A stretch of 64,000 bases of DNA from Macrostomum lignano (GCA_002269645.1 NIVC01001694.1:62001-126000); one strand, 5' to 3'. Shown: positions 198 through 53,533, counted from the stretch's first letter. The notes: a model not told the origin generated them from the letters alone. Program-made: numbers and translations.

Positions 198-1749
198 CGC
201 CCATGTCTCTTGGTGGGCGTCCCTGTCTCTTGGTGGGCATCCCTGTCTCTTGGTGGGCGTCCCTGTCTCTTGGTTGGCGCCCCTGTCTCTTGGTGGGCGT
301 CCCTGTCTCTTGGTGGGCGTCCCTGTCTCTTGGTGGGCGCCCCTGTCTCTTGGTGGGCGTCCCTGTCTCATGGTTGGCGCCCCTGTCTCTTGGTTGGCGC
401 CCCTGTCTCTTGGCGGGTGCCCCTGTCTCTTGGTGGGCGTCCCTGTCTCTTGGTGGGCGCCCCTGTCTCTTGGTGGGCGCCCCTGTCTCTTGGTGGGCGT
501 CCCTGTCTCTTGGCGGGTGCTCCTGTCTCTTGGTGGGCGTCCGTGTCTCTTGGTGGGCGTCCCTGTCTCTTGGTGGGCGTCCCTGTCTCTTGGTGGGCGT
601 CCTTGTCTCTTGGTGGGCGTCCCTGTCTCTTGGTGGGCGCCCCTGTCTCTTGGTGGGCGTCCCTGTCTCTTGGTGGGCGCCCCTGTCTCTTGGTGGGCGT
701 CCCTGTCTCTTGGTGGGCGTCCCTGTCTCTTGGTGGGCGCCCCTGTCTCTTGGTGGGCGCCCCTGTCTCTTGGTGGGCGTCCCTGTCTCTTGGCGGGTGC
801 CCCTGTCTCTTGGTGGGCGTCCGTGTCTCTTGGTGGGCGTCCCTGTCTCTTGGTGGGCGTCCCTGTCTCTTGGTGGGCGTCCTTGTCTCTTGGTGGGCGT
901 CCCTGTCTCTTGGTGGGCGCCCCTGTCTCTTGGTGGGCGTCCCTGTCTCTTGGTGGGCGCCCCTGTCTCTTGGTGGGCGTCCCTGTCTCTTGGTGGGCGT
1001 CCCTGTCTCTTGGTTGGCGCCCCGGTCTCTTGGTGGGCGTCCCTGTCTCTTGGTGGGCGCCCCTGTCTCTTGGTGGGCGTCCCTGTCTCTTGGTGGGCGT
1101 CCCTGTCTCTTGGCGGGTGCCCCTGTCTTTTGGTGGGCGTCCCTATCTCTTGGTGGGCGCCCCTGTCTCTTGGTGGGCGCCCCTGTCTCTTGGTGGGCGT
1201 CCCTGTCTCTTGGCGGGTGCCCCTGTCTCTTGGTGGGCGTCCGTGTCTCTTGGTGGGCGTCCCTGTCTCTTGGTGGGCGTCCCTGTCTCTTGGTGGGCGT
1301 CCTTGTCTCTTGGTGGGCGTCCCTGTCTCTTGGTGGGCGCCCCTGTCGCTTGGTGGGCGTCCTTGTCTCTTGGTGGGCGTCCCTGTCTCTTGGTGGGCGC
1401 CCCTGTCGCTTGGTGGGCGTCCCTGTCTCTTGGTGGGCGCCCCTGTCTCTTGGTGGGCGTCCCTGTCTCTTGGTGGGCGTCCCTGTCTCTTGGTTGGCGC
1501 CCCGGTCTCTTGGTGGGCGTCCCTGTCTCTTGGTGGGCGCCCCTGTCTCTTGGTGGGCGTCCCTGTCTCTTGGTGGGCGTCCCTGTCTCTTGGCGGGTGC
1601 CCCTGTCTCTTGGTGGGCGCCCCTGTCTCTTGGTGGGCGTCCCTGTCTCTTGGTGGGCGTCCGTGTCTCTTGGTGGGCGTCCCTGTCTCTTGGTGGGCGT
1701 CCCTGTCTCATGGTTGGCGCCCCTGTCTCATGGTTGGCGCCCCTGTCTC
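198..1749 (+). repeat. 20-bp GC-rich minisatellite, tract 1 (consensus CCCTGTCTCTTGGTGGGCGY), ~77 copies
   Basis: Direct reading: 20-bp period with recurring variants (tggcgggtgc, ccgtgtctct, ccttgtctct, cccggtctct). Long ORFs here are by-products of the repeat. Confidence 0.97.
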
Positions 1750-1757
1750 CTGCACGC

Positions 1758-3260
1758 GAAGGCGTATTCAGCATGCCAGTAAGTATGAGACAGACTAGGC
1801 CCATGGGCTAAGGTCTGCGATGCTTTATGCCTGCGCCTTTTTTCAGCAGGTCAAGGCTGGTGGGAGGTCTGCACCCTCTATTTGCCTCTGGCAGCCGCAG
1901 ACCCCCCCCACGCTGTCTCGCAAGCCGACCCAGGGTACTCGTCTCCACGTGTGTTCAAGGCAGACCCTAGGGCTGCCGGACTGACTGGGCTCCGGCGCTG
2001 GGGACCCATCCAGTGACTTCTGCCGAACTTGGGTATGCGGGTCTGGCTTGCCAGTCCGCAGGCCGTGGTACTGCTCAACGTACCCTCTAATGCCTAAGGT
2101 GTTTGACCGTGCTGATGGGCTGGAAGGCCGGGGAGTAGTCCGGTCGCAAGCGGTCCCCTCCTGGTGTCGGGCCAGCCTTGAGGGTTCTTTTGGCCTACTG
2201 CCCGGTCAGGTGGAGCGGCCGGGTGGGTACCGCGCCCCTTCGAGGTAGCCCACCAACCTTTATCATGGCCTTCGAGCCGACTATGGATAAAAGCCCTATT
2301 TCTAGGGACGGGGACCCTTCTAAACCCCAACCTCAGTCCGAAGGACCGGCCGGCCCTGCTGGCAGAACCCAACCGACTGATTCATCTGTGGCAAAGGAAG
2401 TCGGATCTGCTGGCAGATCCGACCAGAGCTACCAAACTCAAAGTACCCAAAGACCTTCCAGCTCTGCTGGTGGATCTAAGGGAACCGCGAGCTCTGAGCC
2501 TAAAGGACCGGCCAAATCTGGCAGAACCGACGAAGCTCAGCGGGCTCGGCTTGAGCGCAAACGCGCTAAGCAACGCGCCAAAAGGCAGGCCAAGAAGGGA
2601 GCTGCGGTGGCCAAAGCGGCGGCGTCCACCATGGATGCTGAAGCGACTGGCGTCCCAAAGCAACCAGACGGGCCGGCCGGTGGAAGCTCCGGTAGTTCAG
2701 CGGCGGCGCTCCCTGGAGATGCTGCTACGGCTGAGGCTGAGCTGAGGCCGAAACCACGGCGCAACATATGGCCACTGCCAACAAGAAGTTTCTTTCGGGA
2801 GCTACCTTTTAGGCGAAGGCCAAGGCCAAAATCCCGGGAGTGATCATTCAAGGTCGCGACCAGGACGGGACCACTGGTCAGCTTCAAAAAGTGGAGTGCT
2901 GCTCACTCCTGTCTGATTGAGCTGACTGTCGAGGAGGGAAGCTGCGAAGCACATTCGTTCTTATTGCTCCCAGCAGTGAGGAGGACGCTCAGCAGCTACT
3001 CCAGCGACTGCCGACGGTCTCCTTGGATGCTGACCTTGGCAGAGCTCTTTTTCTTCGCGAAGGCCAGCGTCCAAAGACAATACCCTATGTGATTTTTGTC
3101 CCTGCTAAGAGCACCGCAGCTGGACCCGACGTTATCCGCCGGGTCCTACTGCGTCTGAACCCCGACCTCCCTGCTAGTGGACTGGTGTACCACCGCAAAG
3201 TCCGCAGGGGGGAGACGGGCAACTCAATTGTCCTCGGCCTTTCCAACGCTTGGGCGAGTC
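1758..3260 (+). mobile_element. 5' part (5'UTR plus degraded ORF1) of an older non-LTR retrotransposon copy (A), continuing as copy C after the nested insertion
   Basis: Reverse-complement homologue of 7620-9155. Begins gaaggcgtattcagcatgccag like copy B. ORF1 ATG at 2265 (MAFEPTMDK), with a frameshift near 2750 and small deletions near 2890-2940. Confidence 0.92.
2971..3260 (+). repeat. Left copy of 290-bp direct duplication (putative target-site duplication)
   Basis: Reads identical to 9155-9444. Both copies differ at many sites from the equivalent ORF1 region of copy B. Confidence 0.9.
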
Positions 3261-3357
3261 TTGACTTACTTGACTTAGCTGCAGGGCTGTCCCGGAGGGG
3301 ACACAGCGGGAAGGCGCGGGCGCCCATTCCGCTAGTCCCTGAACGGCCGACGCGTCG

Positions 3358-6300
3358 CTATGGACGGAGGGTTGGCGCCGCCCAGGGAGGTCCCCCAGTG
3401 TCGCCAGCAGCTATGGTGCTCTCTGGAAAGGAGAGTTCAGCCCTGCGGGTGGCCCGAAGGTAGCGCATGAGCTGATTAAAGTTTTCGGGTTTGCACGCTT
3501 CAGTAATAGATGTGTGTGGCCCGAGGTAAGTGAGTCTGGCCCGCGTGAAGGCGGGACAGATGCTGACGAAATGCTCAGCGGTTTCGTCACCTGAGTTGCA
3601 GAAACTACAGGTGGCGTTGGTGGCGTTGCCCTGCAGGTACTGGTGCCTGGAGAAGCAGCCGTGACCAGAGAGGGTCATGGTGGCAGCCCGGATGTCTCTG
3701 CGCGAGAGGCGCAAGAGGAGCTTCCGGAGCTGGTGAGAGGGCTGAGGGACAGCGCCTCTGGATTGCCTGCAGTTCGTGCGGTTCGCCCAAGTCGAGCGGT
3801 GCTGAGTCCTGATCCACGCTTTGATGCGCGAGTCGATGACACAGCCAGGGATCGGGACAAGAGGTTCGGGGCCGAGAGAGGAGCCGGAGGCACCAACTTT
3901 TGCAAGGGTGTCAGCCAACTCATTTCCTCGGATCCCCACATGCCCCGGAACCCACTTAAGGGTAATTTTGTTGGCGGAACCCAACACATTGAGGAGTTTG
4001 ATACAGTCAAGGACTGTAGCAGAGTTGGTGCTGCAGCCACTGATGGCGTGCAAGGCAGCTTGGCTGTCCGAATGGAAAATGATGTTCTTACCAGTAACGC
4101 CAGTGGCGAGAAGCTCTGCAGTGCAGGAGCTGATGGCCAGAACTTCATTTTGGAAAACACTGGAGTTGACCCCAGTGTATTGAGCGTGGGTAGCGATGAC
4201 CCTCCCGTTCAGAAAGATTCCAACACCAAAGCCGGTGTTGGCTGACTGCTTAGAACCGTCGGTGTAGCAATGAAGCTCACCAGGGTTCCAATGGTCATTG
4301 ATGTTATCGCGCGAGTCGATAGCTACGGAATAGCGCTGTCTCAGGTTGAGCGTTGAGGCAATGCCATCGGTGAAGACGCGATTGGCCTGACACTCGTTGA
4401 GAAAGTTGAGGCACAGATCGCTATGCGGGACAAGGTTCCGCTTAGCAGGTGCTCTCATGTAAATGAATTTGACGCCGGCATCAATTAGACGCCGCGTCGT
4501 TCTAGCCGCCTCACCCCTGATGAAGAGGTCAAGAGGCGGAAGATTAAGAAAGGCCCCCATGCCAGCAAAGGGCGTGGACCTGGTGGCGTTGCAGATGAGC
4601 CTACACGCTCTGCCTTGGATCGTGTTGAGCAGGTCTGCATGGCTTTTGACCTGGGTAGCGCTAACCCAGACAACAGAGGCGTACGTAATGGCAGGTCTAA
4701 CTACGGAAGTATAGATCCACCAAAGCCGCTTTGGGGATAGACCCCAAGAAGTGCCAAGTGCTCGTCGGAGCTGGGCCAGGATGGCTGAGGCACGCTTAGC
4801 TTTTGCTTTCACGTGGAAGGACCAGTTGAGCCGGTGGTCAAGTGTGACCCCGAGACATCTGGTCTGGTGCGCGAAGGCAATATCTCTGCCGTAGAGCTGC
4901 AGAGGACGTATGTTCCAGCGTAGTCTGCTGGTAAACATAATGGCAACGGTTTTGGGCTCAGAGAGTTCCAAACCATTGTCATTGGCCCAGGATTCTGCTT
5001 TGCGGATAAAGCTCTGCATCAGATCCCTGAGCGTGCTGGGAGACGGTCCTGCCACAATGGCCGTGACGTCATCAGCATACCCGACTTTGAAGACGGGGTC
5101 AGGTCGGGAGTCACTCAGAAGAGCGTCCATGACCAGGTTCCAGAGCGTCGGGGTGAGGACTCCGCCTTGGGGTCCACCCTTACAGACTCTGGTGGAGGCA
5201 GTTTGCCCAAGAAGTTGGGCAGTGTCCGTACGGTTGGAGATCATGTACATGATCCACCGTATGAGGGTAGCATGAGCTTTGCGATTTTGAAGGGCCCTCT
5301 GAAACGCTTCAAAGATAACGTTGTCGAAGGCGCCAACAATGTCAAGAAAGAGAGCCAGGGCGTAACCGTCACCCAGTACCGCCCGTTCAATCTTCTCGAC
5401 AATCGCATGCAGGGCGCTGTCAGTCGACCTCCCGGTACGGAAGGCGTGCTGATTATTGCTGAGGGGCATCGCTGTCAGCTCGCAGGAGAGCAGCCGCCAG
5501 AGAATAAGCCTCTCAGTGAGCTTAAGCATTGCTGACGTTAAGCTAATTGGCCGGAAGGCCTTGACGCTTTGGTAGTCACCCTTCCCAGGTTTGGGAATAA
5601 AGACTACTCGAGCTTCAGTCCAGCTTTTGGGAACGTATCCCAGCTGGATAGAGGCCCGCATAAGATTGCGGGTGAGTCTCAGGAACGAGGGTATCTTGGC
5701 TGCTTCACGAAGGAGAACAGGGTAGATACCATCAGGTCCAGGAGATTTGAAGGGTTTGAAGGTTCTGACCGCACGAGCGATTAGGTCTTCAGTGACAATG
5801 CCCGCCGCTAGGGTGGCTCCATCCATCGAATGGTTGGGCTCCGGTCTAGCAGTAGGTACCCTCGGGAAGAATGTGCTAAGCATATGCTGAAGCACTTCTT
5901 CAGGGTCTTTAGTAAGAGAGCCATCATCTTTTTTTATCATGGCTAATTTGGACATTTTGTCCATTGTAAGGGCCTTGACAAGCCTAGAAGTAGGTCTGTC
6001 TTGATCCAATTCATTGCAGAATTGGCGCCACTTACATTCCTTGGCCTTGCGCACTTCAGATTTGAAATTGCGGGAGGCTTGCCGGAAAAGCTCCATGTCC
6101 TCCGGGTTTCCGGTCTTCATGGCACGGCGATGAAGGCTTTTGGCCTTCCGCCTGAGTTTCCCCAGCTCCGGGTTCCACCACGGCGCCGAGGTCTTGCCTC
6201 TGTAGGCGCGAGCAGGACAAGCCGCTTCGTAGGCTGCAATAATGCAACCTGTCAGCGTCTCAGCCATATGATCCACATCCTCGCAGGTCTCAATCGGACG

Positions 6301-7097
6301 TAAGTCCGTGAGTTCCTGCAGGTGCAGATCAAGGGCAGCCTTGTAGGCCGCCCAATCAGTGTTGCGGATATTGCGTCTCCAAGTGATCGGAGACTGGGTT
6401 TTAGTGTCCGCGATATTAAAGGCGATAAAGCAGTGGTCAGACAGGGAGGGCTCCTCAGACCAGACTCTCCACTCCTTGACTCTGTCAAAGAGTCTTGGGG
6501 TAACGAGTGTGGCGTCGAGGACCTCGGTCCATCTGCCATTATTAAAGGTAGGAGTGCTGCCGCGGTTGCAGAGCATGAGGTTTGTGTTAGAGATGAGGGC
6601 CAGAAGCTCCTCTCCTCTAGTGTTGGTATCTTTGCTGCCCCAGTGCTTGTGGTGCGCGTTGAGGTCGCCCCCTAAGCACAGCTCAGCGTTCTGGGACTCG
6701 CAGTACTGCGCAAGGCGCAGTAAACTCTCGGGAGCAGGGTCTCTGTCGCCTGGGATATAAACCGAGGCAACAAGACACGTACGCGGAGAGAAATGATTAG
6801 ATTGGATGACGCAAAGGTCTCCATCAGAGAGATCAGTCCTCAGCCAAGCCTGGAGATGGCTAGCAGCGAGGATAGCCGCTCTAGGGCGGCTGTTCCCGGG
6901 CCACACACATAAAAATCAGAGTAGCCAGAGGGAATGTTGGGCAACTTACCGTTGCGCATCCAGGGTTCCTGGATCAGGATGAGGCCTGGCCTGTACAGCT
7001 CAGCAATCTTCATCAGATTTACTGACGCAGATACGCAATGCTGTAAATTTATTTGCAGACAGAATGTCGCTCCTTTGGCAGCGTGGAGCTTAGTCAT
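3358..7097 (-). CDS. ORF2 of copy B (~1246 aa if the single -1 frameshift near 6898 is corrected): endonuclease, reverse transcriptase, RNase H, C-terminal CCHC
   Basis: APE motifs QEP, GDLNAH, SDH. RT motifs PQGGVLTP and YADD. RNase H motifs YTDGSK, SDSQAAL, WVPGHVGIRGNELAD. CSFC-x7-H-x4-C finger. Copy B has cccggg where copy C has cccgggg, which splits ORFs 6840..7097 and 3358..6906. Confidence 0.93.
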
Positions 7098-7120
7098 ACT
7101 GTATTAAATGCAATATCTGG

Positions 7121-8641
7121 CTAGAGCCCAGGGCCATCAAGGAGACTTGGACAACAGATCGTCCTCGTCCCAGGCCGCTGGGGCTTGACTGGGAGATGGG
7201 AGTTGGTCGACGTCCATGGCCTCCTCACCCCCACCGGCCCCCCAGCAGAGTCCTCAGGCTCCGATGACAGGATGGAGGAAGCTTCCTCACCTGCATCTTT
7301 ACCTTCAGACCCCACCAAGGTGGCCGAGGAGAGCTCGGATTCCGAAGACCCGGCCTCGTCCTCAACTCCTTCTCCGACTGGCAGGTTTGGTTCCCGGGGC
7401 TCGGCCGGAGCCGTTACCGCGGTCGCCGAACTGCTGCTAGCAGAGGGGCGAGATGCAGCTTTGGCTTTGGGATCGGCTTGCGCCTTTCCTTGGGCCTTAG
7501 ACTGCGCCCCGCTCTTGCCGGAGATGCCGGGGTTGGCAGTAGCCTTCCCTTTGGCAGACTTTCCTCGGCGCAACTTGAGCTTGAGGGCACCCAGCTGGAA
7601 AGAGGATCCATTAGGGTACCGACTCGCCCAAGTGCTGGAAAGGCCGAGGACAATTGAGTTGCCCGTCTCCCCCCTGCGGACTTTGCGGTGATACACCAGT
7701 CCACTAGCAGGGAGGTCGGGGTTCAGACGCAGTAGGACCCGGCGAATAACGTCTGGTCCAGCTGCGGTGCTCTTAGCAGGGACGAAAACCACATAGGGTA
7801 TCGTCTTTGGACGCTGGCCCTCGCGAAGAAAAAGAGCTCCACCAAGGTCAGCATCCAAGGAGACCGTCGGTAGCCGCTGGAGCAGCCGCCGAGCGTCCTC
7901 CTCGCTGCTAGGAGCAATAAGAACGAATGTGCTTCGCAGCACCATCCGCTCAACGCCGATGGAGATTCCCTCCTCGACAGTCAGCTCAATCAGATAGGAG
8001 TCAACAGCACTCCACACTTTTTGAAGCTGATCAGTGGTCCAGTCCTGGTCGCGACCTTGGATGATCACTCCCGGGATTTTGGCCTTGGCCTTCGCCGCAA
8101 AGGTAGCTCCCGAAGGAACCTCCTTGTTGGCAGTGGCCATTTGTTGCGCCGTGGTTTCGGCCTCAGCAGCCGCGGCAGCAGCTCCAGGGAGCGCCGCCGC
8201 TGAACTACTGGAGCTTCCACCGGCCGGCCCGCCTGGTTGCCTTGGGACTCCAGTCGCTTCAGCATCCATGGTGGACGCCGCCGCTTTGGCCCCCGCAGCT
8301 CCCTTCTTGGCCTGCCTTTTGGCGCGTTGTTTAGCGCGTTTGCGCTCAAGCCGAGCCCGCTGAGCTTCATCGGATCTGCCAGATTTGGCCGGTCCTTTAG
8401 GCTCAGAGCTCGCGGTTCCCTTAGATCCACCAGCGGAGCTGGCAGGTCTTAGGGTATTTTGAGTTTGGTAGCTCTGGTCGGATCTGCCAGCAGAGCCAGC
8501 CGGTCCTTCCTTTGCCACAGTTGAATCAGTCGGTTGGGATCTGCCAGCAGGGCCGGCCGGTCCTTCGGACTGAGGTTGGGGTTTAGAAGGGTCCCCGTCC
8601 CTAGAAATAGCTTGTTTATCCATAGTCGGCTCGAAGGCCAT
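7121..8641 (-). CDS. ORF1 (gag-like) of copy B, ~506 aa from ATG 8641; central region resembles DUF4780-type ORF1s; no zinc knuckle
   Basis: Open frame upstream of ORF2, with a basic tract (RARLERKRAKQRAKRQAKK) and a globular core (..LRLNPDLP..SFQLGALKL). The true C-terminus is probably ..EEAMDVDQLPSPSQAP(A/T)AWDEDDLLSKSP (stop 7137-7139) after a homopolymer frameshift near 7240, by comparison with copy C. The DUF4780 likeness is from memory, not a search. Confidence 0.85.
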   Translation of the reverse strand: MAFEPTMDKQAISRDGDPSKPQPQSEGPAGPAGRSQPTDSTVAKEGPAGSAGRSDQSYQTQNTLRPASSAGGSKGTASSEPKGPAKSGRSDEAQRARLERKRAKQRAKRQAKKGAAGAKAAASTMDAEATGVPRQPGGPAGGSSSSSAAALPGAAAAAAEAETTAQQMATANKEVPSGATFAAKAKAKIPGVIIQGRDQDWTTDQLQKVWSAVDSYLIELTVEEGISIGVERMVLRSTFVLIAPSSEEDARRLLQRLPTVSLDADLGGALFLREGQRPKTIPYVVFVPAKSTAAGPDVIRRVLLRLNPDLPASGLVYHRKVRRGETGNSIVLGLSSTWASRYPNGSSFQLGALKLKLRRGKSAKGKATANPGISGKSGAQSKAQGKAQADPKAKAASRPSASSSSATAVTAPAEPREPNLPVGEGVEDEAGSSESELSSATLVGSEGKDAGEEASSILSSEPEDSAGGPVGVRRPWTSTNSHLPVKPQRPGTRTICCPSLLDGPGL

Positions 8642-9154
8642 GATAAAAGGTTGGTGGGCTACCCTCAAAGGGGCGCGGTACCCACCCGGCCGCTCCACCT
8701 GACCGGGCAGTAGGCCAATAGCACCCTCAAGGCTGGCCCGACACCAGGAGGGGGACCGCTTGCGACCGGACTACTCCCCGGCCTTCCAGCCCATCGGCAC
8801 GGTCAACACCTTAGGCATTAGAGAGTACGTTGAGCAGTACCACGGCCTGCAGGTTGGCGAGCCAGACCCGCATACCCAAATTCGGCCGAAGCCACTGGAT
8901 AGGGTCGCCAGCGCCGGAGCCCAGTCTGTCCAGCAGCCCTAGGGACTGCCTTGAACACACGCGGGGACGAGTACCCTGGGTCGACTTGCGAGACAGCGTG
9001 GGGGGGGGGGTCTGCGGCTGCCAGAGGCAAATAGAAGGTGCAGACCTCCCACCAGCCTTGACCTGCTGAAGATAGGGGCAGGCGTGAAGCATCGCAGACC
9101 TTAGCCCATGGGCCTAGTCTGTCTCATACTTCACTGGCATGCTGAATACGCCTT

Positions 9155-9444
9155 CAGCAGTGAGGAGGACGCTCAGCAGCTACTCCAGCGACTGCCGACG
9201 GTCTCCTTGGATGCTGACCTTGGCAGAGCTCTTTTTCTTCGCGAAGGCCAGCGTCCAAAGACAATACCCTATGTGATTTTTGTCCCTGCTAAGAGCACCG
9301 CAGCTGGACCCGACGTTATCCGCCGGGTCCTACTGCGTCTGAACCCCGACCTCCCTGCTAGTGGACTGGTGTACCACCGCAAAGTCCGCAGGGGGGAGAC
9401 GGGCAACTCAATTGTCCTCGGCCTTTCCAACGCTTGGGCGAGTC
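9155..9444 (+). repeat. Right copy of 290-bp direct duplication
   Basis: Reads identical to 2971-3260 and directly abuts the 5' end of copy B. Confidence 0.9.
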
Positions 9445-9973
9445 AGTACCCTAATGGATCCTCTTTCCAGCTGGGTGCCCTCAAGCTCAAGATGCGCCGA
9501 GGAAAGTCTGCCAAAGGAAAGGCTTCTGCCAACCCCGGCATCTCCGGCAAGAGCGGGGCGCAGTCTAAGGCCCAAGGAAAAGCGCAAGCCAATCCCAAAG
9601 CCGAAGCTTCATCTCGCCCCTCTGCTAGCAGCAGTTCGGCGACCGCGGTAACGGCTCCGGCCAAGCCCCGGGAACCGAACCTGCCAGTCAAAGAAGGAGT
9701 TGAGGACGAGGCCGGGTCATCGGAATCCGAGCTCTCCTCGGCCACCCTGTTGGGGTCTGAAGGCGAAGATGCAGATGAGGAAGCTTCCTCCATCCTGTCA
9801 TCGGAGCCTGAGGACTCTGCTGGGGGGGGGGGCTGGTGAGGGTGAGGAGGCCATGGACGTCGACCAACTCCCATCTCCCAGTCAAGCCCCAACGGCCTGG
9901 GACGAGGACGATTTGCTGTCCAAGTCTCCTTGATGGCCCGGGGCTCTAGCCAGACAATTGCATTTAATACAGT

Positions 9974-12900
9974 ATGACTAAGCTCCACGCTGCCAAAGGA
10001 GCGACATTCTGTCTGCAAATAAATCTACAGCATTGCGTATCTGCGTCAGTAAATCTGATGAAGATTGTTCAGCTGTACAGGCCAGGCCTCATCCTGATCC
10101 AGGAACCCTGGATGCGCAACGGTAAGTTGCCCAACATTCCCTCTGGCTACTCTGATTTTTATGTGTGTGGCCCGGGGAACAACCGCCCTAGAGCGGCTAT
10201 CCTCGCTGCCAGCCATCTCCAGGCTTGGCTGAGGACTGATCTCTCTGATGGAGACCTTTGTGTCATCCAATCTAATCATCTCTCTCCGCGTACGTGTCTC
10301 GTTGCCTCGATTTACATCCCAGGCGACAGAGACCCTGCTCCCGAGAGTCTACTGCGCCTTGCGCAGTACTTCGAGTCCCATAACGCTGAGCCGTGCTTAG
10401 GGGGCGACCTCAACGCGTACCATAAGCACTGGGGCAGCAAAGACACCAATACAAGAGGGGAGGAGCTTCTGGCCCTTATCTCTAACACAAACCTCATGCT
10501 CTGCAACCGCGGTAGCACTCCTACCTTTAACAATGGCAGATGGATTGAGGTCCTCGACGCCACACTCGTTACCCCAAGACTCTTTGACAGAGTTGAGGAG
10601 TGGAGAGTCTGGTCTGAGGAGCCCTCCCTGTCTGACCACTGCTTTATCGCCTTTAACATCGCGGACACAAAACCCCAGTCCTCGATTACTTGGAGGCGTA
10701 ACATCCGCAACACTGATTGGGCGGCCTATAAGGCTACCCTTGATCTGCACCTGCAGGAACTCACGGACTTACGTCCGATTGAGACCTGCGAGGATGTGGA
10801 TCATATGGCTGAGACGCTGACAGGTTGCATTATTGCAGCCTACGAAGCGGCTTGTCCTGCTCGCGCCTACAGAGGCAAGACCTCGGCGCCGTGGTGGAAC
10901 CCGGAGCTGGGGAAACTCGGGCGGAAGGCCAAAAGCCTTCACCGCCGTGCCATGAAGACCGGAAACCCGGAGGACATGGAGCTTTTCCGACAAGCCTCCC
11001 GTAACTTCAAATCTGAAGTGCGCAAGGCCAAGGAATGTAAATGGCGCCAATTCTGCAATGAATTGGATCAAGACAGACCTACTTCTAGGCTTGTCAAGCC
11101 CCTTACAATGGACAGAATGTCCAAATTAGCCATGATCAGAAAAGATGAAGGCTCTCTTACTAAAGACCCTGAAGAAGTGCTTCAGCATATGCCCAGCACA
11201 TTCTTCCCGAGGGTACCCACTGCTAGATCGGAACCCAACCATTCAATGGATGGAGCCATCCTAGCGGCGGGCATTATCACTGAAGACTTAATCGCTCGTG
11301 CGGTCAGAACCTTCAAGCCCTTCAAATCTCCTGGACCTGATGGTATCTACCCTGTTCTTCTTCGTGAAGCAGCCAAGATACCCTCGTTCTTGAGACTTAC
11401 CCGCAATCTCATGCGGGCTTCTATCCAGCTGGGATACGTTCCCAAGTGCTGGACCGAAGCTCGGGTAGTCTTTATTCCCAAACCTGGGAAGGGTGACTAC
11501 CAGAGCGTCAAGGCCTTCAGGCCAATTAGCTTAACGTCAGCAATGCTTAAGCTCACTGAGAGGCTTATTCTCTGGCGGCTGCTCTCCTGCGAGCTGACAG
11601 CAATGCCCCTCAGCAATCATCAGCACGCCTTCCGTACCGGGAGGTCGACTGACAGCGCCCTGCATGCGATAGTCGAGAAGATTGAACGGGCGGTACTGGG
11701 TGACGGTTACGCCCTGGCCCTTTTTCTCGACATTGTTGGCGCCTTCGACAACGTTATCTTTGAAGCGTTTCAGAGGGCCCTTCAAAATCGCAAAGCTCAC
11801 GCTACCCTCATACGGTGGATCATGTACATGATCTCCAACCGTACGGTCACTGCCCAACTTCTTGGGCAAACTGCCTCCGCCAGAGTCTGTAAGGGTGGAC
11901 CCCAAGGCGGAGTCCTCACCCCGACGCTCTGGAACCTGGTCATGGACGCTCTTCTGGGCGACTCCCGACCTGACCCCGTCTTCAAAGTCGGGTACGCTGA
12001 CGACGTCACTGCCATTGTGGCTGGGCCGTCCCCCAGCACGCTCAGGGATCTGATGCAGAGCTTTATTTTGCTTATTAAAGCAGAATCCTGGGCCAATGAC
12101 AACGGTCTGGAACTCTCTTAGCCCTAAACTTTTGCCATTATGTTCACCAGCAGAATACGCTGGAACATACGACCTCTACAGCTCTACGGCAGAGATATTG
12201 CCTTCGCGCACCAGACCAGATGTCTCGGGGTCACACTTGACCACCGGCTCAACTGGTCCTTCCACGTGAAAGCAAAAGCCAAGCGTGCCTCAGCCATCCT
12301 GGCCCAGCTCCGACGAGCACTTGGCACCTCTTGGGGTCTTTCCCCAAAACGGCTTTGGTGGATCTACACTTCCGTAGTTAGACCTGCCATTACGTACGCC
12401 TCAGTTGTCTGGGTTAGCGCTACGCAGGTCAAAAGCCATGCAGATTTGCTCAACACGATCCAGGGCAGAGTGTGTAGGCTTATCTGCAACGCCACCAGGT
12501 CCACGCCCTTTTCCGGCGTGGAGGCCTTCCTTAATCTATCGCCTCTCGACCTCTTCATCAGGGGTGAGGCGGCTAGAACGACGCGGCGTCTAATTGATGC
12601 CGGTGTCAAATTCCTTTACATGAGGGCACCTGCTAAGCGGAACCTCGTCCCGCATAGCGACCTGTGCCTCAACATTCTCAATGAGTATCAGGCCAATCGC
12701 GTCTTCACCGATGGCATTGCCTCAACGCTCAACCTGAGACAACGCTACTCCGTAGCTATCGACTCGCGCGATACCATCAATGACCACTGGAACCCTGGTG
12801 AGCTTCACTGCTACACCGATGGTTCTAAGCAGTCAGCCAACACCGGTTTGGTGTTGGAATCTTCCTGAACGGGAGGGTTATCGCAACCCATGCTCAGTAC

Positions 12901-13717
12901 ACTGGGGTCAACTCTAGTGTCTTCCAAAATGAAGTTCTTGCCATCAGCTCCTGCACCGCAGAGCTCCTCGCCACTGGCGTTACCTGTGAGAACATCATTT
13001 TCCATTCGGACAGCCAAACTGCCTTGCACGCCATCAGTGGCTGCAGCACCAATTCTGCTACAGTCCTCGACTGTATAAAACTCCTCAACATGTTGGGTAC
13101 CACCAACAAAATCACCCTCAAGTGGGTTCCGGGGCATGTGGGAACCCGAGGAAATGAGTTGGCTGACGCCCTTGCGAAAGTTGGCGCCTCCGGCTCCTCT
13201 CTCGGTCCCGAACCCCTTGTCCCAATTCCCGGCTGTGTCATCGACACGCGCATCAAAGCGTGGATCAGGACCCAGCACCGCTCGACTTGGGCGAACTGCA
13301 CTACCTGCAGGCAATCCAGAGGCGCTGTCCCTCAGCCCTCTCACCAGCTCCGGAAGCTCCTCTTGCGCCTCTCGCGCAGAGACATCCGGGCTGCCACCAT
13401 GACCCTCTCAGGTCACGGCTGCTTCTCTAGGCACCAGTATCTGCAGGGCAACGCCACCAACGCCATCTGCAGTTTCTGTAACTCAGGTGACGAAACCGCT
13501 GAGCCTTTCGTCAGCATCTGTCCCGCCTTTACGCGAGCCAGACTCACTTACCTCGGGCCACACATCTATTAATGAAGCTTGCAAACCCGAAAACTTTAAT
13601 CAGCTCATGCGCTACCTCCGGGCCACCCGCAGGGCTGAACTCTCCTTTCCAGAGAGCACCATAGCTGCTGGCGACCCTGGGGGACCTCCCTGGGCGGCGC
13701 CAACCCTTCGTCCATAG
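9974..13717 (+). pseudogene. Disrupted ORF2 of copy C
   Basis: In-frame stop at 12119-12121 and frameshifts near 12858 and ~13565 relative to copy B. APE, RT and RNase H motifs are still recognisable. Confidence 0.92.
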
Positions 13718-13812
13718 CGACGCGTCGGCCGTTCAGGGATTAGCGGAATGGGCGTTCGCGCCTTCCCGCTGTGTCCCCCGGGACAGCCCTGCAGCTAAGT
13801 CAAGTAAGTCCA

Positions 13813-13895
13813 GCCCCTGTCTCTTGGTTGGCGCCCCTGTCTCTTGGTAGGCGCCCCTGTCTCTTGGTGGGCGCCCCTGTCTCATGGTTGGCGCC
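13813..13895 (+). repeat. 20-bp minisatellite, tract 2 (~4 copies)
   Basis: Same unit as tract 1, lying between the retrotransposon 3' tail and the truncated gag. Confidence 0.95.
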
Positions 13896-14773
13896 TTTAC
13901 TCCCCTTACTACGGTGGTTGCCATATCTGGGCAGGCTGTACTATCGTGCGTCGAGCCACATCGGGGACACAGACGTGCAGAATTCTTGTTCTTTGCTATC
14001 GTTGAACCAGGTCTAAGAACTCCTACTTTCATTACAGCAGCCCCATCAGCTTTTGGAGCGTTTTTCATAATAATAGTAGCAATCAACGATGAGAACGCCT
14101 CTGCTTCAGCTACTGCGTCTCTGAAGGTAAGCTTCCGGTGGTCCTTTACAAGTAGCTTTCCGATAACGTTCTGATCACTCAGGCCGCAAATGAATTGGTC
14201 TCTCAGTCTTTCATCGATGTTATTGAAGTCACAGTTTTCTGCCTCTCTTACAAGTCGTTCGGAAAATGCACGCATGCTCTCTCCGTGGTTCCGAGTGCAT
14301 TGTTGAAATGTGAATCTCTCAGCCAAAACGAATGTTGCTGGAACTAACAGTTCATTTAGTGCTTCCACGAGTTCATCGAAGTTCAACCGGCTTGGTTTGT
14401 TAGGCGAGACATGATCGGCCAAGCTGTCATATAGCTTTGGTGAAAGTCGCATAAGAAGTATTTGGGCTTTCCCTACCGAGTCCCAGTTGTTAAAAGCTGC
14501 TGCCACCTCGAATCGGTCCAGCCAGCGTGGCAGATTACTGGAAGCCTCCAGCTTCTCAATATCCACTGCTCCCGCAGTTGGTCGAATAGTCGGTCCATTG
14601 CCATGCGCCATCCGGTCTGCAGAACCAGCTGTCTTCGTAGGACCAGCCGTTTTCGCTGAAGCTGCTGCCCTCGCCAGACCAGCTGTTTTTGCTGATCCCG
14701 CCGTTTTCGCAGGACCAGCTACTTTTGCAGGGCCCTCTGGTGGCCGTGCCGGTGAAGTCGGTGCAGATTTCAT
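13896..14773 (-). mobile_element. Ty3/Gypsy (Mag/K02A2.6-like) gag, 3'-truncated; no pol
   Basis: WLDRFE..LLMRLSPKLY..AERFTFQQCTRNHGESMRAF..L..EAENCDF..RLRDQFICGL, and a CPRCGSTHDSTAC knuckle (C-x2-C-x3-H-x4-C). The sequence runs into the minisatellite shortly after the knuckle. Confidence 0.85.
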
Positions 14774-14951
14774 CTTGCGACGCCACTGTTATGCTTTTCG
14801 TATTATTCTTTTGGAGACCGTGATGCGCAAAGACCACTCTTGAATTGTTAAGTTCTTTTGGAGCTCTTGGGCTCTCAGCTTTTCTTAAATTTATTAATTG
14901 TGTTTAAGAGAGTCGAGCTCTACTGGCTCAAGCAGGCGTTAGCTGCCTACA
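14772..14951 (-). mobile_element. Probable primer-binding site (TGGCGTCGCAAGATG, from 14785) and short 5' LTR (~14951-14787, TGT...ACA)
   Basis: On the minus strand ..ATAACA g TGGCG.. is immediately followed by the gag ATG, and AATAAA lies inside. The LTR 5' boundary is a guess because there is no second LTR to compare. Confidence 0.55.
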
Positions 14952-22874: not shown

Positions 22875-22901
22875 GGCCATCTGCGCAGATGGCTCGCAGA
22901 T

Positions 22902-42539: not shown

Positions 42540-42624
42540 CTGGATTAATGAGGATCAGTGCAGGGCTAATTTAGCGCCTCAATGAATAATCCAGTTCATC
42601 AAAAGATAATTTTGCCGCAACAAA

Positions 42625-49790: not shown

Positions 49791-51873
49791 GTTTCCATAT
49801 CAAGGTCATTCTAAAATATAGAGCAAAAAATAATAGGCCTATGCAAAACTATTTTTTTCATAGCCTACCTTTTAGTTTTAATTTTGTATTAATTAAATAA
49901 ACTTGCTTTTAACTTGCTAATTGCTTTTGGTTTACTTTTTAGCATTTGGTTTTACTTTTTAGCACATTAGCTTTGTATTTTTAAGTCAGGAAAAACATGT
50001 ATAATTTGCTAAATTAACTGGTTTTAATGAAAAATAGCAAAATATTCTCCTATAGTCCCATGAGTCCCTTAATGCAATTTAAGCATAAGGTTAACTTTAA
50101 TGTTCCAAATATTTTGGCTAGGTTTGTATACTCCCTGTGCATTAAGGTCTTAGCCCTCATAGGTGTGAAGTACACAATAACTAAATTTACATATGTATAT
50201 ATTATACAATATATACAATTATATATTATATATAACAATATAGCTATAAAGTAATATCTTGATTATATAATTATAAGATTTATTTTTATCAACAGATTAA
50301 ATTAGGAATAAGAAAGTTGAAAATGATATATTCTTAACAATTGACTAACACAGTAGGCCCCTATATCTCATCTTGGAGACTAGAGTTAACTGACACACAG
50401 AAATAACAATAAAAAGAAACAACTAGCCCATATAGGTAGCATTGCAAATTGTATTGAGTAATTTCTTTTTATAAATTATAAATAAATTCTAACTCAATTT
50501 CTATTAATTTTATTTCATTAACAACTTTTAAAATATAAGCCTGGTTTTAAAAATCCTAGCAGCTACAAAATACATTCTTTACACCTTCAATTCATTAATT
50601 CACTCAAGGCATAATGACAAAGCTTATTTCTTGAAACTTGGAAGCATAATCCATATAATACCATTTATTATCTAAGTCTAAGAAGGCCCTCTTCTATTCT
50701 GGGCTGGCCAATGGTCCAATTCATAAAAAAACTAATGACAATGAGCTAAATATTACTGCGTAACTTTATTAGTCCATATTGCTACAGCTATATCTTAATT
50801 TTTTAGAAAAGCAACGAACAACTTGGTCTCCCACAGCTCAATTAATTGATATATTGAACTATTGTAAGTTTAATTTATCACAGGAAACCTACCTCATTTT
50901 GAAAAAAAGTATTAAATTTCTCATGCACGTTAAAACAAATCAAATACACTTATTAATTAAGCTTGCAGTTTTATGGTAAAGCTTAAATCAATTTTTCTTA
51001 TTTTTTTCTATAACATTAAATTTAATAACTAACTAACTAGTGTTAACTATATTTATTACAAGTGCAGTGCACCAAAGTCATAAATAAAATTTTAAGAAAA
51101 AGTCTGCAGATTACTTCAAAAATACATGTGGCTCTTTCCGTGAACACGTACAGTATCCACGCATGAGCTTGTACACATGTACATGCGCGTACAGGAGTCG
51201 ATCGGAGGAATGGAAAGAATTGCCTCATAGGGCAGAGTTACAGGGCGATGTCACTGAAAGCGTTGTTTCAAAAGTGCCCATGTCACTACTAGTCCTCCTG
51301 CCAAATATTGATCTATCGAGATGCAAATACGTACATGTACAGTATGCCTTCTTTTTTAAATATGGCAATGTACAAGCCGCGTAAAAGTTCCCCAAAACTA
51401 AATGCACAATTTACGTCTTTTCTAAACACCAACGATTTTTTTATTGAATTCTACTATTCTGATTCTAGCATGCAGATAAACAAATGAAATAAATTTAAAA
51501 GTTCCGGGTTTGCAATCAACTCTGGAGACTGCTATAAAATGCAGCTATTTTTTTGCTAAAGTCTCTTTCGGGATTTGTCACTTTTAGAGGGGCTCGGAAT
51601 GAATTTCCCGGCGCGAATGCGAGGCAAATTTTCCCTCTTAACGAGCATTCGACCACGGCTGTCCTGTAAACCGCGAAGGGATTAGAGAGTAGGGTAAACC
51701 GATTTACACTGCCACAAAAACAGGGCGCACAGCTTCAGCTAGGAATTGCGAATATTATTACTATGTGGCCATATTTTCTTTATGAAAATTCTACGCAAAA
51801 AAACTCCTTTGATAATCAATGAAGATGGGCATCCAGTATAATGCTACTCTTGATTCCAACTGCTGTAAAAATG

Positions 51874-53533
51874 CACCAAGAGACAGGGGCGCCCATCAAG
51901 AGACAGGGGCGCCCACCAAGAGACAGGGGCGCCCACCAAGACACAGGGGCGCCCACCAAGAGACAGGGGCGCCCACCAAGAGACAGGGGCGCCCACCAAG
52001 AGACAGGGGCGCCCATCAAGAGACAGGGGCGCCCACCAAGAGACAGGGGCGTCCACCAAGAAACAGGGGCGCCCACCAAGAGACAGGGGCGCCCACCAAG
52101 ACACAGGGGCGCCCACCAAGACACAGGGGCGCCCACCAAGAGACAGGGGCGCCCATCAAGAGACAGGGGCGCCCACCAAGAGACAGGGGCACCCACCAAG
52201 AGACAGGGGCACCCACCAAGAGACAGGGGCACCTACCAAGAGACAGGGGCACCCACCAAGAGACAGGGGCACCCACCAAGAGACAAGGACACCCACCAAG
52301 AGACAAGGGCACCCACCAAGAGACAAGGGCACCCACCAAGAGACAGGGGCACCCACCAAGAGACAGGGGCTACCCACCAAGACACAGGGGCGCCCACCAA
52401 GACACAGGGGTGTCCACCAAGACACAGGGGCGCCCACCAAGACACAGGGGCGCCCACCAAGAGACAGGGGCACCCACCCAGAGACAGGGGCGCCCACCAA
52501 GACACAGGGGCACCCACCAAGACACAGGGGCACCCACTAAGAGACAGGGGCACCCACCAAGAGACAGGGGCACCCACCAAGAGACAAGGGCACCCACCAA
52601 GAGACAAGGGCACCCACCAAGAGACAGGGGCACCCACCAAGAGACAAGGGCACCCACCAAGAGACAGGGGTGCCCACCAAGAGACAGGGGCTACCCACCA
52701 AGACACAGGAGCGCCCACCAAGACACAGGGGTGTCCACCAAGACACAGGGGCGCCCACCAAGACACAGGAGCGCCCACCAAGACACAGGGGTGTCCACCA
52801 AGACACAGGGGCGCCCACCAAGACACAGGGGCGCCCACCAAGAGACAGGGGCGTCCACCAAGAGACAGGGGCACGCACCAAGAGACAGGGGCACCCACCA
52901 AGAGATAGGGGCGTCCACCAAGAAACAGGGGCGCCCACCAAGAGACAGGGGCACCCATCAAGAGACAGGGGCACCCACCAAGAGACAGGGGCACCCATCA
53001 AGAGACAGGGGCACCCATCAAGAGACAGGGGCACCCATCAAGAGACAGGGGCACCCACCAAGAGACAGGGGCACCCACCAAGAGACAGGGGCACCCATCA
53101 AGAGACAGGGGCACTCATCAAGAGACAGGGGGCACCCATCAAGAGACAGGGGCACCCATCAAGAGACAGGGGCACCCATCAAGAGACAGGGGGCACCCAC
53201 CAAGAGACAGGGGCACCCATCAAGAGACAGGGGCACCCATCAAGAGACAGGGGGCACCCACCAAGAGACAGGGGCACCCATCAAGAGACAGGGGGCACCC
53301 ACCAAGAGACAGGGGCACCCATCAAGAGACAGGGGGCACCCATCAAGAGACAGGGGCACCCATCAAGAGACAGGGGCACCCATCAAGAGACAGGGGCACC
53401 CATCAAGAGACAGGGGCGTCCACCAAGAGACAGGGGCACGCACCAAGAGACAGGGGCACCCACCAAGAGACAGGGGCACCCACCAAGAGACAGGGGCACC
53501 CACCAAGAGACAGGGGCACCCATTAAGAGACAC
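51874..53533 (-). repeat. 20-bp GC-rich minisatellite, tract 5 (~80 copies), opposite orientation to tracts 1-4
   Basis: CAAGAGACAGGGGCRCCCAY is the reverse complement of the tract-1 unit. Confidence 0.97.

What the first reader, a model, noticed from the sequence alone, without database searches (positions are those of the whole stretch)
198..53533. The same 20-bp minisatellite sits at deletion and truncation breakpoints: candidate mobile or repair-filler satellite
Seen: five dispersed tracts of CCCTGTCTCTTGGTGGGCGY in both orientations (198-1749, 13813-13895, 22465-22874, 23173-23267, 51874-53533). Tract 4 joins a duplicate of 18537-18841 directly to the middle of CYP exon 2, standing in for ~2.8 kb of the intact CYP2 unit. 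Tract 2 ends at the point where a Gypsy gag is cut off. Tract 3 joins CYP 3'-flank to a scrambled junction. Junctions show short overlaps with the repeat (ttgg at 23169-23172, ctct/gg at 22871-22876). Inference: the repeat is either captured as filler during double-strand-break repair (from RNA or extrachromosomal circles) or seeds local deletions after inserting. Either would be a system in which a minisatellite drives birth-and-death of a detoxification gene cluster.
Basis: partly seen in the sequence, partly recalled or inferred. Interest (0 to 1): 0.75.

Follow-up and report, generated by a model that had tools for sequence, protein, structure and literature searches.

The report
Unstable hairpin minisatellite, not a mobile filler
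The five tracts are three ordinary loci of a hairpin-forming 20-bp minisatellite in the flatworm Macrostomum lignano; two arrays were later split by insertions, and only one array edge is a real rearrangement junction, so nothing shows that the repeat moves or serves as imported repair filler.

Summary
The five tracts exist as described (182 matches against 0.02 expected). The window is Macrostomum lignano contig NIVC01001694.1:62001-126000. Two other contigs of the same assembly carry the same locus at about 96-98% identity, so the joins are not assembler chimeras.

Tracts 1 and 2 are one array, split by a LINE that has a 10-bp target-site duplication. Tracts 3 and 4 share a private unit variant and run in continuous phase. 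They are separated by a 298-bp patch made of local sequence. These two arrays are paralogues inside a duplicated block: CYP body, 3' flank, 182-bp flank and array.

Tract 5 has collinear flanks in the second contig, with about 5 units there against 83 here.

The gag-like piece is not cut by the satellite. It is a separate 1.1-kb insertion with its own 11-bp duplication, 33 bp from tract 2, and one contig lacks it.

One real breakpoint remains. The right edge of the second array carries microhomology joins to a 17-nt CYP exon-1 piece, to the copy of 18537-18841 and to a CYP exon-2 relic. One contig has a further ~90-bp microhomology deletion there.

Each unit junction forms the palindrome GGGCGCCC, and single strands fold into GC hairpins. 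The best reading is a fragile, expandable minisatellite. Mobility is unsupported.

The parts
1..197 (+). Left flank 'L' of array A. Positions 1-182 are 94% identical to 22282-22463, the left flank of array B.
   Evidence: Upstream of the window (L004) lie CYP0 and its 3' flank.
198..1749 (+). Tract 1, the left part of array A (77 units).
   Evidence: It measures 960 bp and about 400 bp in the two other contigs.
1740..1749 (+). Left copy of the LINE target-site duplication CCCCTGTCTC, inside the satellite.
1750..13813 (+). Outer non-LTR retrotransposon (LINE) inserted into array A. Its 5' part is 1750-3260 and its 3' part is 9155-13813.
   Evidence: The nested copy of this LINE family (3261-9154) has endonuclease, RT and RNase H domains; only that copy's ORF2 was scanned.
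3261..9154 (-). Second, full-length LINE of the same family, nested in the first. It is flanked by a 290-bp duplication that is 100% identical (2971-3260 = 9155-9444). Both other contigs lack it.
13814..13823 (+). Right copy of the LINE target-site duplication CCCCTGTCTC.
13813..13895 (+). Tract 2, the right part of array A. It shares the CTCATGGTTGGCGC unit variant with the end of tract 1.
13896..13928 (+). Native right flank of array A. It runs on into 15035 and beyond in the contig that lacks the insertion.
13929..15034 (-). 1,106-bp insertion with TG..CA ends that encodes only a gag-like protein with a zinc knuckle. It is flanked by the 11-bp duplication GTTGCCATATC (13918-13928 and 15035-15045). 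NIVC01000594.1 lacks it.
15660..17424 (+). CYP1, a two-exon cytochrome P450. Exon 1 holds the 17-mer CTCTGGCCATCTGCGCA at 15703-15719.
18537..18841 (+). X, the source or paralogue of the copy at 22902-23172.
20263..21914 (+). CYP2, a hybrid gene. It has its own 5' flank and first ~75 nt. From there through exon 2, the 3' flank and L, identity to CYP0 is 98-99% in the exons and 92-96% in the intron, 3' flank and L.
22282..22464 (+). Left flank 'L' of array B.
22465..22874 (+). Tract 3, the left part of array B.
22871..22901 (+). Composite join. 22871-22887 is an exact 17-mer of CYP1 exon 1. Next comes a snap-back copy that completes the palindrome GCCATCTGCGCAGATGGC (22876-22893). Then comes the direct repeat TCGCAGAT.
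22902..23172 (+). X', the copy of 18537-18841. It ends in TTGG, which is shared with the satellite.
23173..23267 (+). Tract 4, the right part of array B. It carries the CCCTGCCTC variant that otherwise occurs only in tract 3.
23268..23511 (+). Relic of the C-terminal half of CYP exon 2, running to the stop codon, with its own 3' flank. NIVC01000594.1 has lost about 90 bp more here.
24976..26079 (+). CYP3, 5'-truncated in this contig only by a 935-bp deletion at an ATTT microhomology. No satellite is involved.
51874..53533 (-). Tract 5, or array C (83 units). Its flanks are unrelated to those of A and B. In NIVC01000522.1 the same flanks hold about 5 units.

Best explanation
This is an ordinary GC-rich 20-bp minisatellite family of Macrostomum lignano, present at three loci in the window. 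Array A is tracts 1 and 2. Array B is tracts 3 and 4. Array C is tract 5. The arrays sit at fixed places and grow and shrink in situ.

Shown: a LINE inserted into array A and made a 10-bp target-site duplication. That array therefore looks like two tracts 12 kb apart.

Shown: arrays A and B are paralogues. They share a duplicated block made of the CYP body, the 3' flank, the 182-bp flank L and the array.

Inferred: the block arose by unequal crossing-over between exon 1 of two older CYP paralogues. This made CYP2 a hybrid gene and duplicated everything between them, including the array, CYP1, X and the next CYP.

Inferred: in the second copy, almost everything between array B and the middle of the last CYP's exon 2 was lost through microhomology-mediated joins. 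What remains, in genomic order, is a 17-nt piece of exon 1 with a snap-back palindrome, X', 95 bp of satellite, and the exon-2 relic.

The simplest sequence of events has two steps. First, a large deletion anchored at the array edge joined the array to exon 2. Second, a break inside one satellite unit (CTCT|TGG) was repaired with a patch copied from local templates. This explains why tracts 3 and 4 run in continuous phase and share a private variant.

Proposed mechanism: GGGCGCCC at every unit junction is self-complementary, so single strands fold into a row of 8-bp GC hairpins. Such structures favour slippage, fork stalling and breakage. That would make the arrays length-variable and occasionally the site of error-prone repair. 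The repeat is the place where events happen. It is not a thing that moves.
For: - Tracts: searches confirm all five.
- Organism and homeologues: the best CYP hit is M. lignano. The window is identical to NIVC01001694.1 from position 62001. NIVC01000522.1 and NIVC01000594.1 are collinear at about 96-98% and carry tracts 1-4.
- Array A: the LINE ends are defined by comparison with the nested copy. CCCCTGTCTC flanks both ends, and removing the LINE plus one copy restores an in-phase unit. The same holds in all three contigs.
- A/B paralogy: the left flanks are 94% identical. The CYP0 and CYP2 units are 97% identical over 2.1 kb. Identity is mosaic between contigs, which indicates gene conversion. 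The identity switch lies inside exon 1, and the 5' flanks cannot be aligned.
- Array B: CCCTGCCTC units occur only in tracts 3 and 4. Tract 3 ends at CTCT and tract 4 resumes at TGG. The 17-mer matches CYP1 exon 1 exactly. The palindrome and direct repeat lie at the join. TTGG and CTCTTC overlaps mark the other joins. The whole structure is identical in three contigs.
- Ongoing instability: tract 1 measures 1550, 960 and 400 bp; tract 3 measures 410, 120 and 178 bp; tract 5 measures 1660 and about 105 bp. NIVC01000594.1 has a deletion at a TGTCTC microhomology.
- Hairpins: folding energy is -21.2 and -22.0 kcal/mol per 100 nt on the two strands, with z-scores of -4.5 and -5.0.
- Background: 35% of this window is tandem repeats, and 15% of the assembly is simple and tandem repeats (PMC5730564).
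Against: - The same 20-mer lies at two loci (A/B and C) whose flanks share no similarity. At some earlier time satellite sequence did reach a second place, and I cannot say how.
- No genome-wide map could be made with these tools. Enrichment at breakpoints is therefore untested beyond this locus.
- Three of roughly 15 structural differences between the contigs lie within 200 bp of an array edge, against about 0.5-1 expected. This is a post hoc count on a small sample, and it hints that array neighbourhoods are not neutral.
- The order of events at array B cannot be resolved. X' is about as diverged from X (93.6-95.6%) as the two L flanks are from each other. That fits X' as a remnant of the duplication as well as it fits a later templated patch.
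- Hairpin formation and fragility in vivo are inferred from sequence only.
Confidence: 0.75

Rival explanations
1. The 20-mer is itself mobile, or is captured from RNA or extrachromosomal circles as filler when breaks are repaired. Each tract then marks an independent repair or insertion event.
For: Arrays A/B and C share the unit but no flank, so the family has dispersed at least once. Tract 4 (95 bp) lies between two unrelated pieces with short overlaps at both joins. In one of my sub-models it is a locally templated copy of the array.
Against: No contig shows an empty site. Tracts 1 and 2 are explained by a LINE target-site duplication. Arrays A and B are inherited together with 2.3 kb of flank and gene. 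Tract 5 is collinear on both sides. Tract 4 carries tract 3's private variant, so its source is 300 bp away and not a circle or an RNA. The gag 'truncation' is not at the satellite.
Confidence: 0.06
2. The satellite is the central repeat of a non-autonomous transposon, such as a Helentron/HINE as in oysters and Drosophila DINE-1. L would be its left arm and the palindrome after tract 3 its 3' hairpin.
For: L is conserved next to two arrays. An 18-bp perfect palindrome follows tract 3. HINEs carry central tandem repeats and a 3' palindrome (PMC7492417).
Against: L is shared because the whole gene block is duplicated. Array C has neither L nor any shared right flank. No subterminal inverted repeats of 9 bp or more were found between left and right flanks at any array. 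The palindrome is absent at arrays A and C. It is explained as a snap-back of a CYP exon-1 17-mer.
Confidence: 0.04
3. Dispersed arrays act as substrates for unequal (non-allelic homologous) recombination. The A/B duplication and the deletions would then be array-to-array exchanges.
For: Arrays A and B lie in direct orientation about 9 kb apart once later insertions are removed. Similarity to the right of the two arrays is lost exactly at the arrays.
Against: The left limit of the duplicated block is inside CYP exon 1, with no array upstream of CYP0. The pieces right of array B are collinear with CYP1 exon 1, then X, then exon 2. This fits a gene-to-gene exchange followed by deletions better than an array-to-array exchange. 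The joins show 4-6-nt microhomologies, not long homology.
Confidence: 0.12
4. Assembly artefact: the joins are chimeras made by the assembler through the shared repeat.
For: 36% of Mlig_3_7 scaffold length is reported as chimeric between subgenomes (PMC10733133). Tandem repeats are hard to assemble.
Against: Every join (L/tract 1, tract 1/LINE, LINE/tract 2, tract 3/patch, X'/tract 4, tract 4/relic) recurs base for base in three separately assembled contigs. Those contigs differ by 2-4% and by private insertions. Both tract 5 joins recur in two contigs.
Confidence: 0.02

Closest known systems
Classical unstable minisatellites, such as the human hypervariable loci and CEB1 (named from my own knowledge)
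   Same: The unit is 10-100 bp and GC-rich. The arrays are head-to-tail at fixed loci. Copy number changes severalfold to 16-fold between homologous copies. Variant units cluster within an array. Secondary-structure potential is the presumed cause of instability.
   Different: The structure here is a self-complementary 8-mer (GGGCGCCC) that gives hairpins on both strands, not a G-quadruplex motif. Nothing is known about meiotic behaviour in this flatworm. Allelic variation was not measured; only differences between subgenome copies were.
Microhomology-mediated repair with templated insertions: polymerase-theta end joining or MMBIR (PMC7165422, PMC8421209; found, abstracts only read)
   Same: The join between tracts 3 and 4 has 4-6-nt overlaps at each step. 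It has an inverted snap-back copy and a short direct repeat. Its pieces were copied from templates a few kb away (CYP1 exon 1 and X).
   Different: A 270-bp piece is longer than typical polymerase-theta inserts. The enzymes cannot be identified from sequence. X' may instead be a remnant of the duplicated block and not a copied patch.
Helentron-borne satellite-like repeats of the Pacific oyster (PMC7492417)
   Same: Short arrays of one repeat family are scattered in gene-rich DNA, and a palindrome follows one array.
   Different: There is no conserved left or right module, no subterminal inverted repeats, and the unit is 20 bp against 100-500 bp. The palindrome is join-specific. Membership was tested and not met.
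Tandem gene duplication by unequal crossing-over between paralogues, giving a hybrid gene (general knowledge)
   Same: CYP2 has its own promoter region and first ~75 nt. From there it carries the body, 3' flank and downstream sequence of CYP0. The material after it is collinear with the interval between the two parent genes.
   Different: The second copy of the interval has been almost wholly deleted. The parental, unduplicated state was not observed in any contig.
Nested LINE insertion into tandem repeats
   Same: The LINE is full length with a target-site duplication taken from the repeat. A second copy is nested in the first.
   Different: The nested copy has an unusually long 290-bp duplication of its target.

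Membership tests
Minisatellite (fixed-locus, length-variable tandem array) | Head-to-tail units of 10-100 bp | tested here: met
   Period is 20. Copy numbers are 4-83, with 89-93% matches.
Minisatellite (fixed-locus, length-variable tandem array) | Same flanks but different copy number in homologous copies | tested here: met
   Tract 1 has 77, 48 and 18 units. Tract 3 has about 19, 6 and 9. Tract 5 has 83 and about 5. The flanks are identical in each case.
Minisatellite (fixed-locus, length-variable tandem array) | Array-private unit variants, indicating local homogenisation | tested here: met
   GGGCGT alternation occurs in tract 1. TGCCTC occurs only in tracts 3 and 4. TTGATGGGTGC and TGTGTC occur in tract 5.
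   All three contigs carry tracts 1-4. Both contigs that cover tract 5 carry it.
   The LINE target-site duplication joins tracts 1 and 2. A shared variant and continuous phase join tracts 3 and 4. Arrays A and B share 2.3 kb of flank.
   No M. lignano genome or read set can be searched by DNA here. A protein-space proxy and a metagenome scan found nothing.
Helentron non-autonomous element (HINE) with central repeats | Conserved left and right flanking modules at every array | tested here: not met
   The flanks of tract 5 compared with those of arrays A and B score at shuffle level, with z from -1.2 to 1.0. The right flanks of A and B are unrelated.
Helentron non-autonomous element (HINE) with central repeats | Subterminal inverted repeats of 11-12 bp, with a 3' palindrome after the right one | tested here: not met
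   No inverted 9-mer was found between left and right flanks at any array. The palindrome occurs only after tract 3 and derives from a CYP exon-1 17-mer.
LINE insertion by target-primed reverse transcription | Target-site duplication, with element ends matching another copy | tested here: met
   CCCCTGTCTC lies at 1740-1749 and 13814-13823. The ends align with the nested copy. The nested copy's ORF2 has endonuclease, RT and RNase H domains.
Microhomology-mediated templated repair junction | Microhomology at each join, local templates, and snap-back or direct-repeat scars | tested here: met
   The overlaps are CTCT(GG), TTGG and CTCTTC. The 17-mer comes from 15703-15719 and X from 18537-18841. 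The palindrome lies at 22876-22893.
Microhomology-mediated templated repair junction | Dependence on polymerase theta or break-induced replication | not testable with these tools
   This needs genetics.
Unequal crossing-over between paralogous genes (hybrid gene) | Sharp switch of identity inside the gene, with shared downstream sequence | tested here: met
   CYP0 and CYP2 cannot be aligned upstream and differ at about 25 of the first ~75 nt. From there they are 98-99% identical in the exons and 92-96% in the intron, the 3' flank and L.
Unequal crossing-over between paralogous genes (hybrid gene) | An unduplicated parental arrangement in an outgroup | not tested
   No outgroup locus was available.

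The most novel reading that the evidence does not exclude
Arrays of this palindrome-bearing 20-mer may be natural fork-collapse sites. At array B, one collapse would have been repaired by serial template switching: array, then CYP exon 1, then snap-back, then X, then array, then CYP exon 2. A single germline event would then have removed about 6 kb and killed two duplicated P450 genes. If this holds genome-wide, hairpin minisatellites would be a measurable driver of gene loss between the three young subgenomes of M. lignano.
Probability: 0.25. Interest if true: 0.5.

Novelty: new member of a known kind. Interest (0 to 1): 0.27.

Why it matters
The finding would have mattered if a satellite moved or was pasted into breaks, and that is not what the sequence shows. 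Two smaller points remain of use. First, M. lignano carries three recently diverged copies of most loci in one assembly. Any odd-looking join can therefore be checked against two internal controls, and here that check resolved a complicated locus. Second, the locus is a clean natural example of three things: a hairpin-forming minisatellite that changes length up to 16-fold between subgenomes, that received a LINE, and that carries a multi-step microhomology junction next to a dead P450 copy. A genome-wide test of array edges against other sites across the three subgenomes would show whether such arrays speed up gene loss after genome duplication.

Tried and rejected
- Translated satellite plus left flank, searched against the protein collection to fish out other arrays: no hits.
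- Metagenome scan for a two-unit pattern: no hits.
- Exact look-ups of the LINE, gag-like and ARL proteins to sample more of the genome: none on record, and the ARL protein has no annotated homeologue. It worked through a cluster look-up, and that gave the tract 5 homeologue.
- A Helentron reading, prompted by the palindrome after tract 3: rejected.
- My first idea, that the A/B duplication ends in the array because of a template switch from CYP0 into the CYP2 locus. I replaced it with unequal crossing-over in exon 1 followed by deletions. The surviving pieces (exon-1 17-mer, X', exon-2 relic) lie in genomic order, and X' is as old as the flank duplication.
- Homology between the right flanks of arrays A and B: none found.
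- tRNA and Rfam scans for SINE-like carriers: nothing found.
- Similarity between the 20-mer and the 18-mer at the window end: weak (13 of 20 positions; 4% of shuffles do as well).

Full report
**1. Observation**

Tandem Repeats Finder and a pattern search confirm five tracts of CCCTGTCTCTTGGTGGGCGY at the stated coordinates. Four are on the + strand and one on the - strand. There are 182 matches at up to 3 mismatches, against 0.02 expected. The window as a whole is very rich in tandem repeats: 35% of its bases, of which the 20-mer makes up 5.9%.

**2. Where the window comes from, and three copies of the locus**

- The cytochrome P450 genes of the window find Macrostomum lignano proteins as their best hits.
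- Fetching the contigs that encode these proteins shows that the window is NIVC01001694.1:62001-126000 of assembly GCA_002269645.1. L004 overlaps window 1-5558 identically.
- The same locus is present on NIVC01000522.1 (L002, L001, L005) and on NIVC01000594.1 (L007, L003). It is collinear and about 96-98% identical.
- This fits the published picture of three subgenomes in this assembly (PMC10733133). It also fits a genome in which simple and tandem repeats make up 15% (PMC5730564).
- These copies serve as internal controls for every join.

**3. Tracts 1 and 2 are one array split by a LINE**

- The 12 kb between tracts 1 and 2 is not Gypsy. It is a non-LTR retrotransposon on the + strand (1750-3260 plus 9155-13813).
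- A second full-length copy of the same family is nested in it on the - strand (3261-9154). Its ORF2 has endonuclease, reverse transcriptase and RNase H domains.
- The nested copy is flanked by a 290-bp duplication that is 100% identical. Both other contigs lack the nested copy and hold a single copy of the 290 bp.
- Comparing the ends of the two copies defines the termini of the outer element. The outer element is flanked by CCCCTGTCTC at 1740-1749 and at 13814-13823.
- Removing the element and one copy of the duplication restores an in-phase unit. The same joins occur in all three contigs.
- The unit variant CTCATGGTTGGCGC occurs at the end of tract 1 and in tract 2.
- Tracts 1 and 2 are therefore one array (A) into which a LINE inserted.

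**4. The gag-like piece is not cut by the satellite**

- Right of tract 2 come 33 bp of native flank. Then comes a 1,106-bp segment (13929-15034) with TG..CA ends, whose - strand encodes a gag-like protein ending just after a zinc knuckle.
- The segment is flanked by GTTGCCATATC on both sides. NIVC01000594.1 lacks it and has one copy of the 11-mer, with the native flank running straight on.
- Pfam gives only a weak hit, below the curated cut-off, to DUF7083.
- The long ORF that seemed to run from gag into the satellite exists only because four of the six frames of the satellite are open.

**5. Arrays A and B are paralogues within a duplicated gene block**

- The 182 bp to the left of tract 1 and of tract 3 are 94% identical.
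- Upstream of the window lies another P450 gene, CYP0. From within exon 1 through the intron, exon 2, the 3' flank and the first 131-135 bp of L, it is 97% identical to the CYP2 unit.
- Identities between the six copies in the three contigs form a mosaic, which indicates continuing gene conversion.
- The 5' flanks of CYP0 and CYP2 cannot be aligned, and their first ~75 coding nucleotides differ at about 25 positions. After that the exons are 98-99% identical.
- In NIVC01000594.1, CYP0, the 3' flank, L and tract 1 are contiguous. In the other two contigs an LTR retrotransposon sits in L. It encodes protease, RT, RNase H and integrase, has 153-bp LTRs, and lies at L004 12178-16094.
- The simplest origin is unequal crossing-over between exon 1 of CYP0 and exon 1 of a downstream paralogue. 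This predicts a hybrid gene, CYP2, followed by a second copy of everything that lay between the two parents: the array, CYP1, X and the downstream gene. This step is inferred.

**6. The real rearrangement: the right edge of array B**

Reading rightwards from tract 3, the sequence is:
- tract 3 ending in ...CCCTGTCTCT;
- GGCCATCTGCGCA, which together with the preceding CTCT is an exact 17-mer of CYP1 exon 1 (15703-15719; 14 nt also match CYP2 exon 1);
- GATGGC, which completes the perfect palindrome GCCATCTGCGCAGATGGC;
- TCGCAGAT, a direct repeat of the preceding bases;
- X' (22902-23172), a copy of 18537-18841 that ends in TTGG;
- tract 4, which starts at TGG..., the next phase of the unit;
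- at CTCTTC, the C-terminal half of CYP exon 2 down to its stop codon, followed by a 3' flank unlike that of any other copy.

Further points:
- A 14-17-nt exact match is not expected by chance in 80 kb. This is my own estimate, about 6e-4 for a 14-mer.
- The structure is identical in all three contigs. It is therefore real and older than the split between the subgenomes.
- The surviving pieces lie in the genomic order exon 1, X, exon 2. X' is about as diverged from X (93.6-95.6%) as the two L flanks are from each other. This fits remnants of the duplicated interval.
- Tracts 3 and 4 share the unit variant CCCTGCCTC, which occurs nowhere else, and they run in continuous phase. This fits one array into which the patch was placed at a break between CTCT and TGG.
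- I cannot decide between two sub-models. In the first, a large deletion joined the array to exon 2, and a templated patch came later. In the second, a single event with several template switches produced everything.
- In both sub-models tract 4 comes from the adjacent array, and every join uses microhomology.
- NIVC01000594.1 has a further loss of about 90 bp, from inside a satellite unit to GTGTCTC in the exon relic. This is an independent microhomology deletion at the same edge.

**7. Tract 5**

- Its flanks show no similarity to the flanks of arrays A or B.
- In NIVC01000522.1 both flanks are the same as in the window, but the array has about 5 units instead of 83.
- This is a collinear, unrearranged locus with expansion or contraction in place.

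**8. A sequence feature that can explain the behaviour**

- The unit junction reads GGGCGC|CC, so GGGCGCCC recurs every 20 nt and is self-complementary.
- Folded as single-stranded DNA, five units form two 8-bp GC hairpins on either strand. The energies are -21.2 and -22.0 kcal/mol, against about -12 for shuffles (z -4.5 and -5.0).
- It is established knowledge that hairpin-forming repeats slip, stall forks and break. That this happens here is inference.

**9. Is the satellite special at breakpoints?**

- Between the three contigs I count about 15 structural differences of 30 bp or more, apart from changes in array length.
- Most are ordinary transposon insertions or deletions away from the arrays.
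- One of them is a 935-bp deletion that removes the 5' end of CYP3 in the window contig only. It sits at an ATTT microhomology with no satellite nearby.
- Three lie within 200 bp of an array edge: the LTR element in L, the gag-like insertion, and the ~90-bp deletion. About 0.5-1 would be expected. This count is small and post hoc, so I treat it as a hint only.

**10. Rivals**

- A transposon carrier of the Helentron type fails its defining features.
- Array-to-array unequal exchange is less likely than gene-to-gene exchange, because the left limit of the duplicated block is in exon 1 and no array lies upstream of CYP0.
- Assembly artefact is excluded by the three-fold recurrence of the joins.

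**11. Verdict**

The interpretation as a mobile or imported filler satellite is not supported. The weaker idea, that the array is a place where deletions start, holds at one of three loci. This is a new example of a known kind of sequence. How the family first reached two unrelated loci is unexplained, and the genome-wide test could not be run here.

Noticed in passing
window 2971-3260 and 9155-9444 (flanking 3261-9154): The nested full-length LINE is flanked by a 290-bp duplication of its target that is 100% identical. Both other contigs lack the LINE. The insertion is therefore very recent, and its target duplication is unusually long.
   Followed up: partly
L004 12029-16274 (upstream of the window): An LTR retrotransposon (protease, RT, RNase H and integrase; 153-bp LTRs; no gag ORF) sits in flank L in two contigs but not in NIVC01000594.1. 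The first 135 bp of L occur on both sides of it at only 90% identity. This is too long and too diverged to be a target-site duplication and is probably the end of a gene-conversion tract.
   Followed up: partly
window 13929-15034: This is a gag-only retroelement piece with TG..CA ends and an 11-bp flanking duplication. That duplication is longer than integrase normally makes, and the piece has no poly(A) tail. Its mode of insertion is unclear.
   Followed up: partly
window 17814-18124: A 312-bp insertion is specific to this contig. It has TG..CA ends and a 5-bp duplication (ACACA), and it looks like a solo LTR.
   Followed up: partly
window 24976 (against L002/L001 merged 39707-40642): CYP3 has lost 935 bp, including its start, in this contig only, at an ATTT microhomology. 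It is intact in NIVC01000522.1, where it is annotated as PAA81604.1. The 935 bp are also present in NIVC01000594.1, where no gene is called at that spot.
   Followed up: yes
L002 27699-31379 (equivalent to window ~18700-18704): NIVC01000522.1 has a 3.7-kb insertion inside X with about 5 bp of overlap at the ends. It was not characterised.
   Followed up: no
CYP0 (L004 10001-11650) and CYP2 (window 20263-21914) in all three contigs: Identity is mosaic. For example, the intron is 100% identical between this contig's CYP0 and both copies in NIVC01000522.1, but 92-96% identical to the others. This indicates continuing gene conversion between the two paralogues within and across subgenomes.
   Followed up: partly
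window 63930-64000, continuing in L008 17518-18179 and 19755-20672: An 18-mer minisatellite, CTCTGTAGCTGGCGCCCC, also ends in a GC palindrome core (GGCGCC) and resembles the 20-mer weakly. It occurs as two tracts on either side of a 22-mer array. Split arrays therefore seem common here.
   Followed up: partly
window 42120-46596 (- strand): The myosin regulatory light chain gene has two exons. Its 4-kb intron holds three different tandem arrays: a 20-mer AAGCTAATTTGGCATCTGAG, a GAGGA-rich tract and a 52-mer.
   Followed up: partly
window 31725-40962: A 9.2-kb array of the 16-mer TTTGATCTTGTGAAGA has a strong G-over-C skew. It is collinear with NIVC01000522.1 as far as that locus reaches.
   Followed up: no
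window 53566-53610: A 45-bp indel lies 33 bp from the edge of tract 5. It is present here and absent in NIVC01000522.1, with a GT overlap.
   Followed up: no
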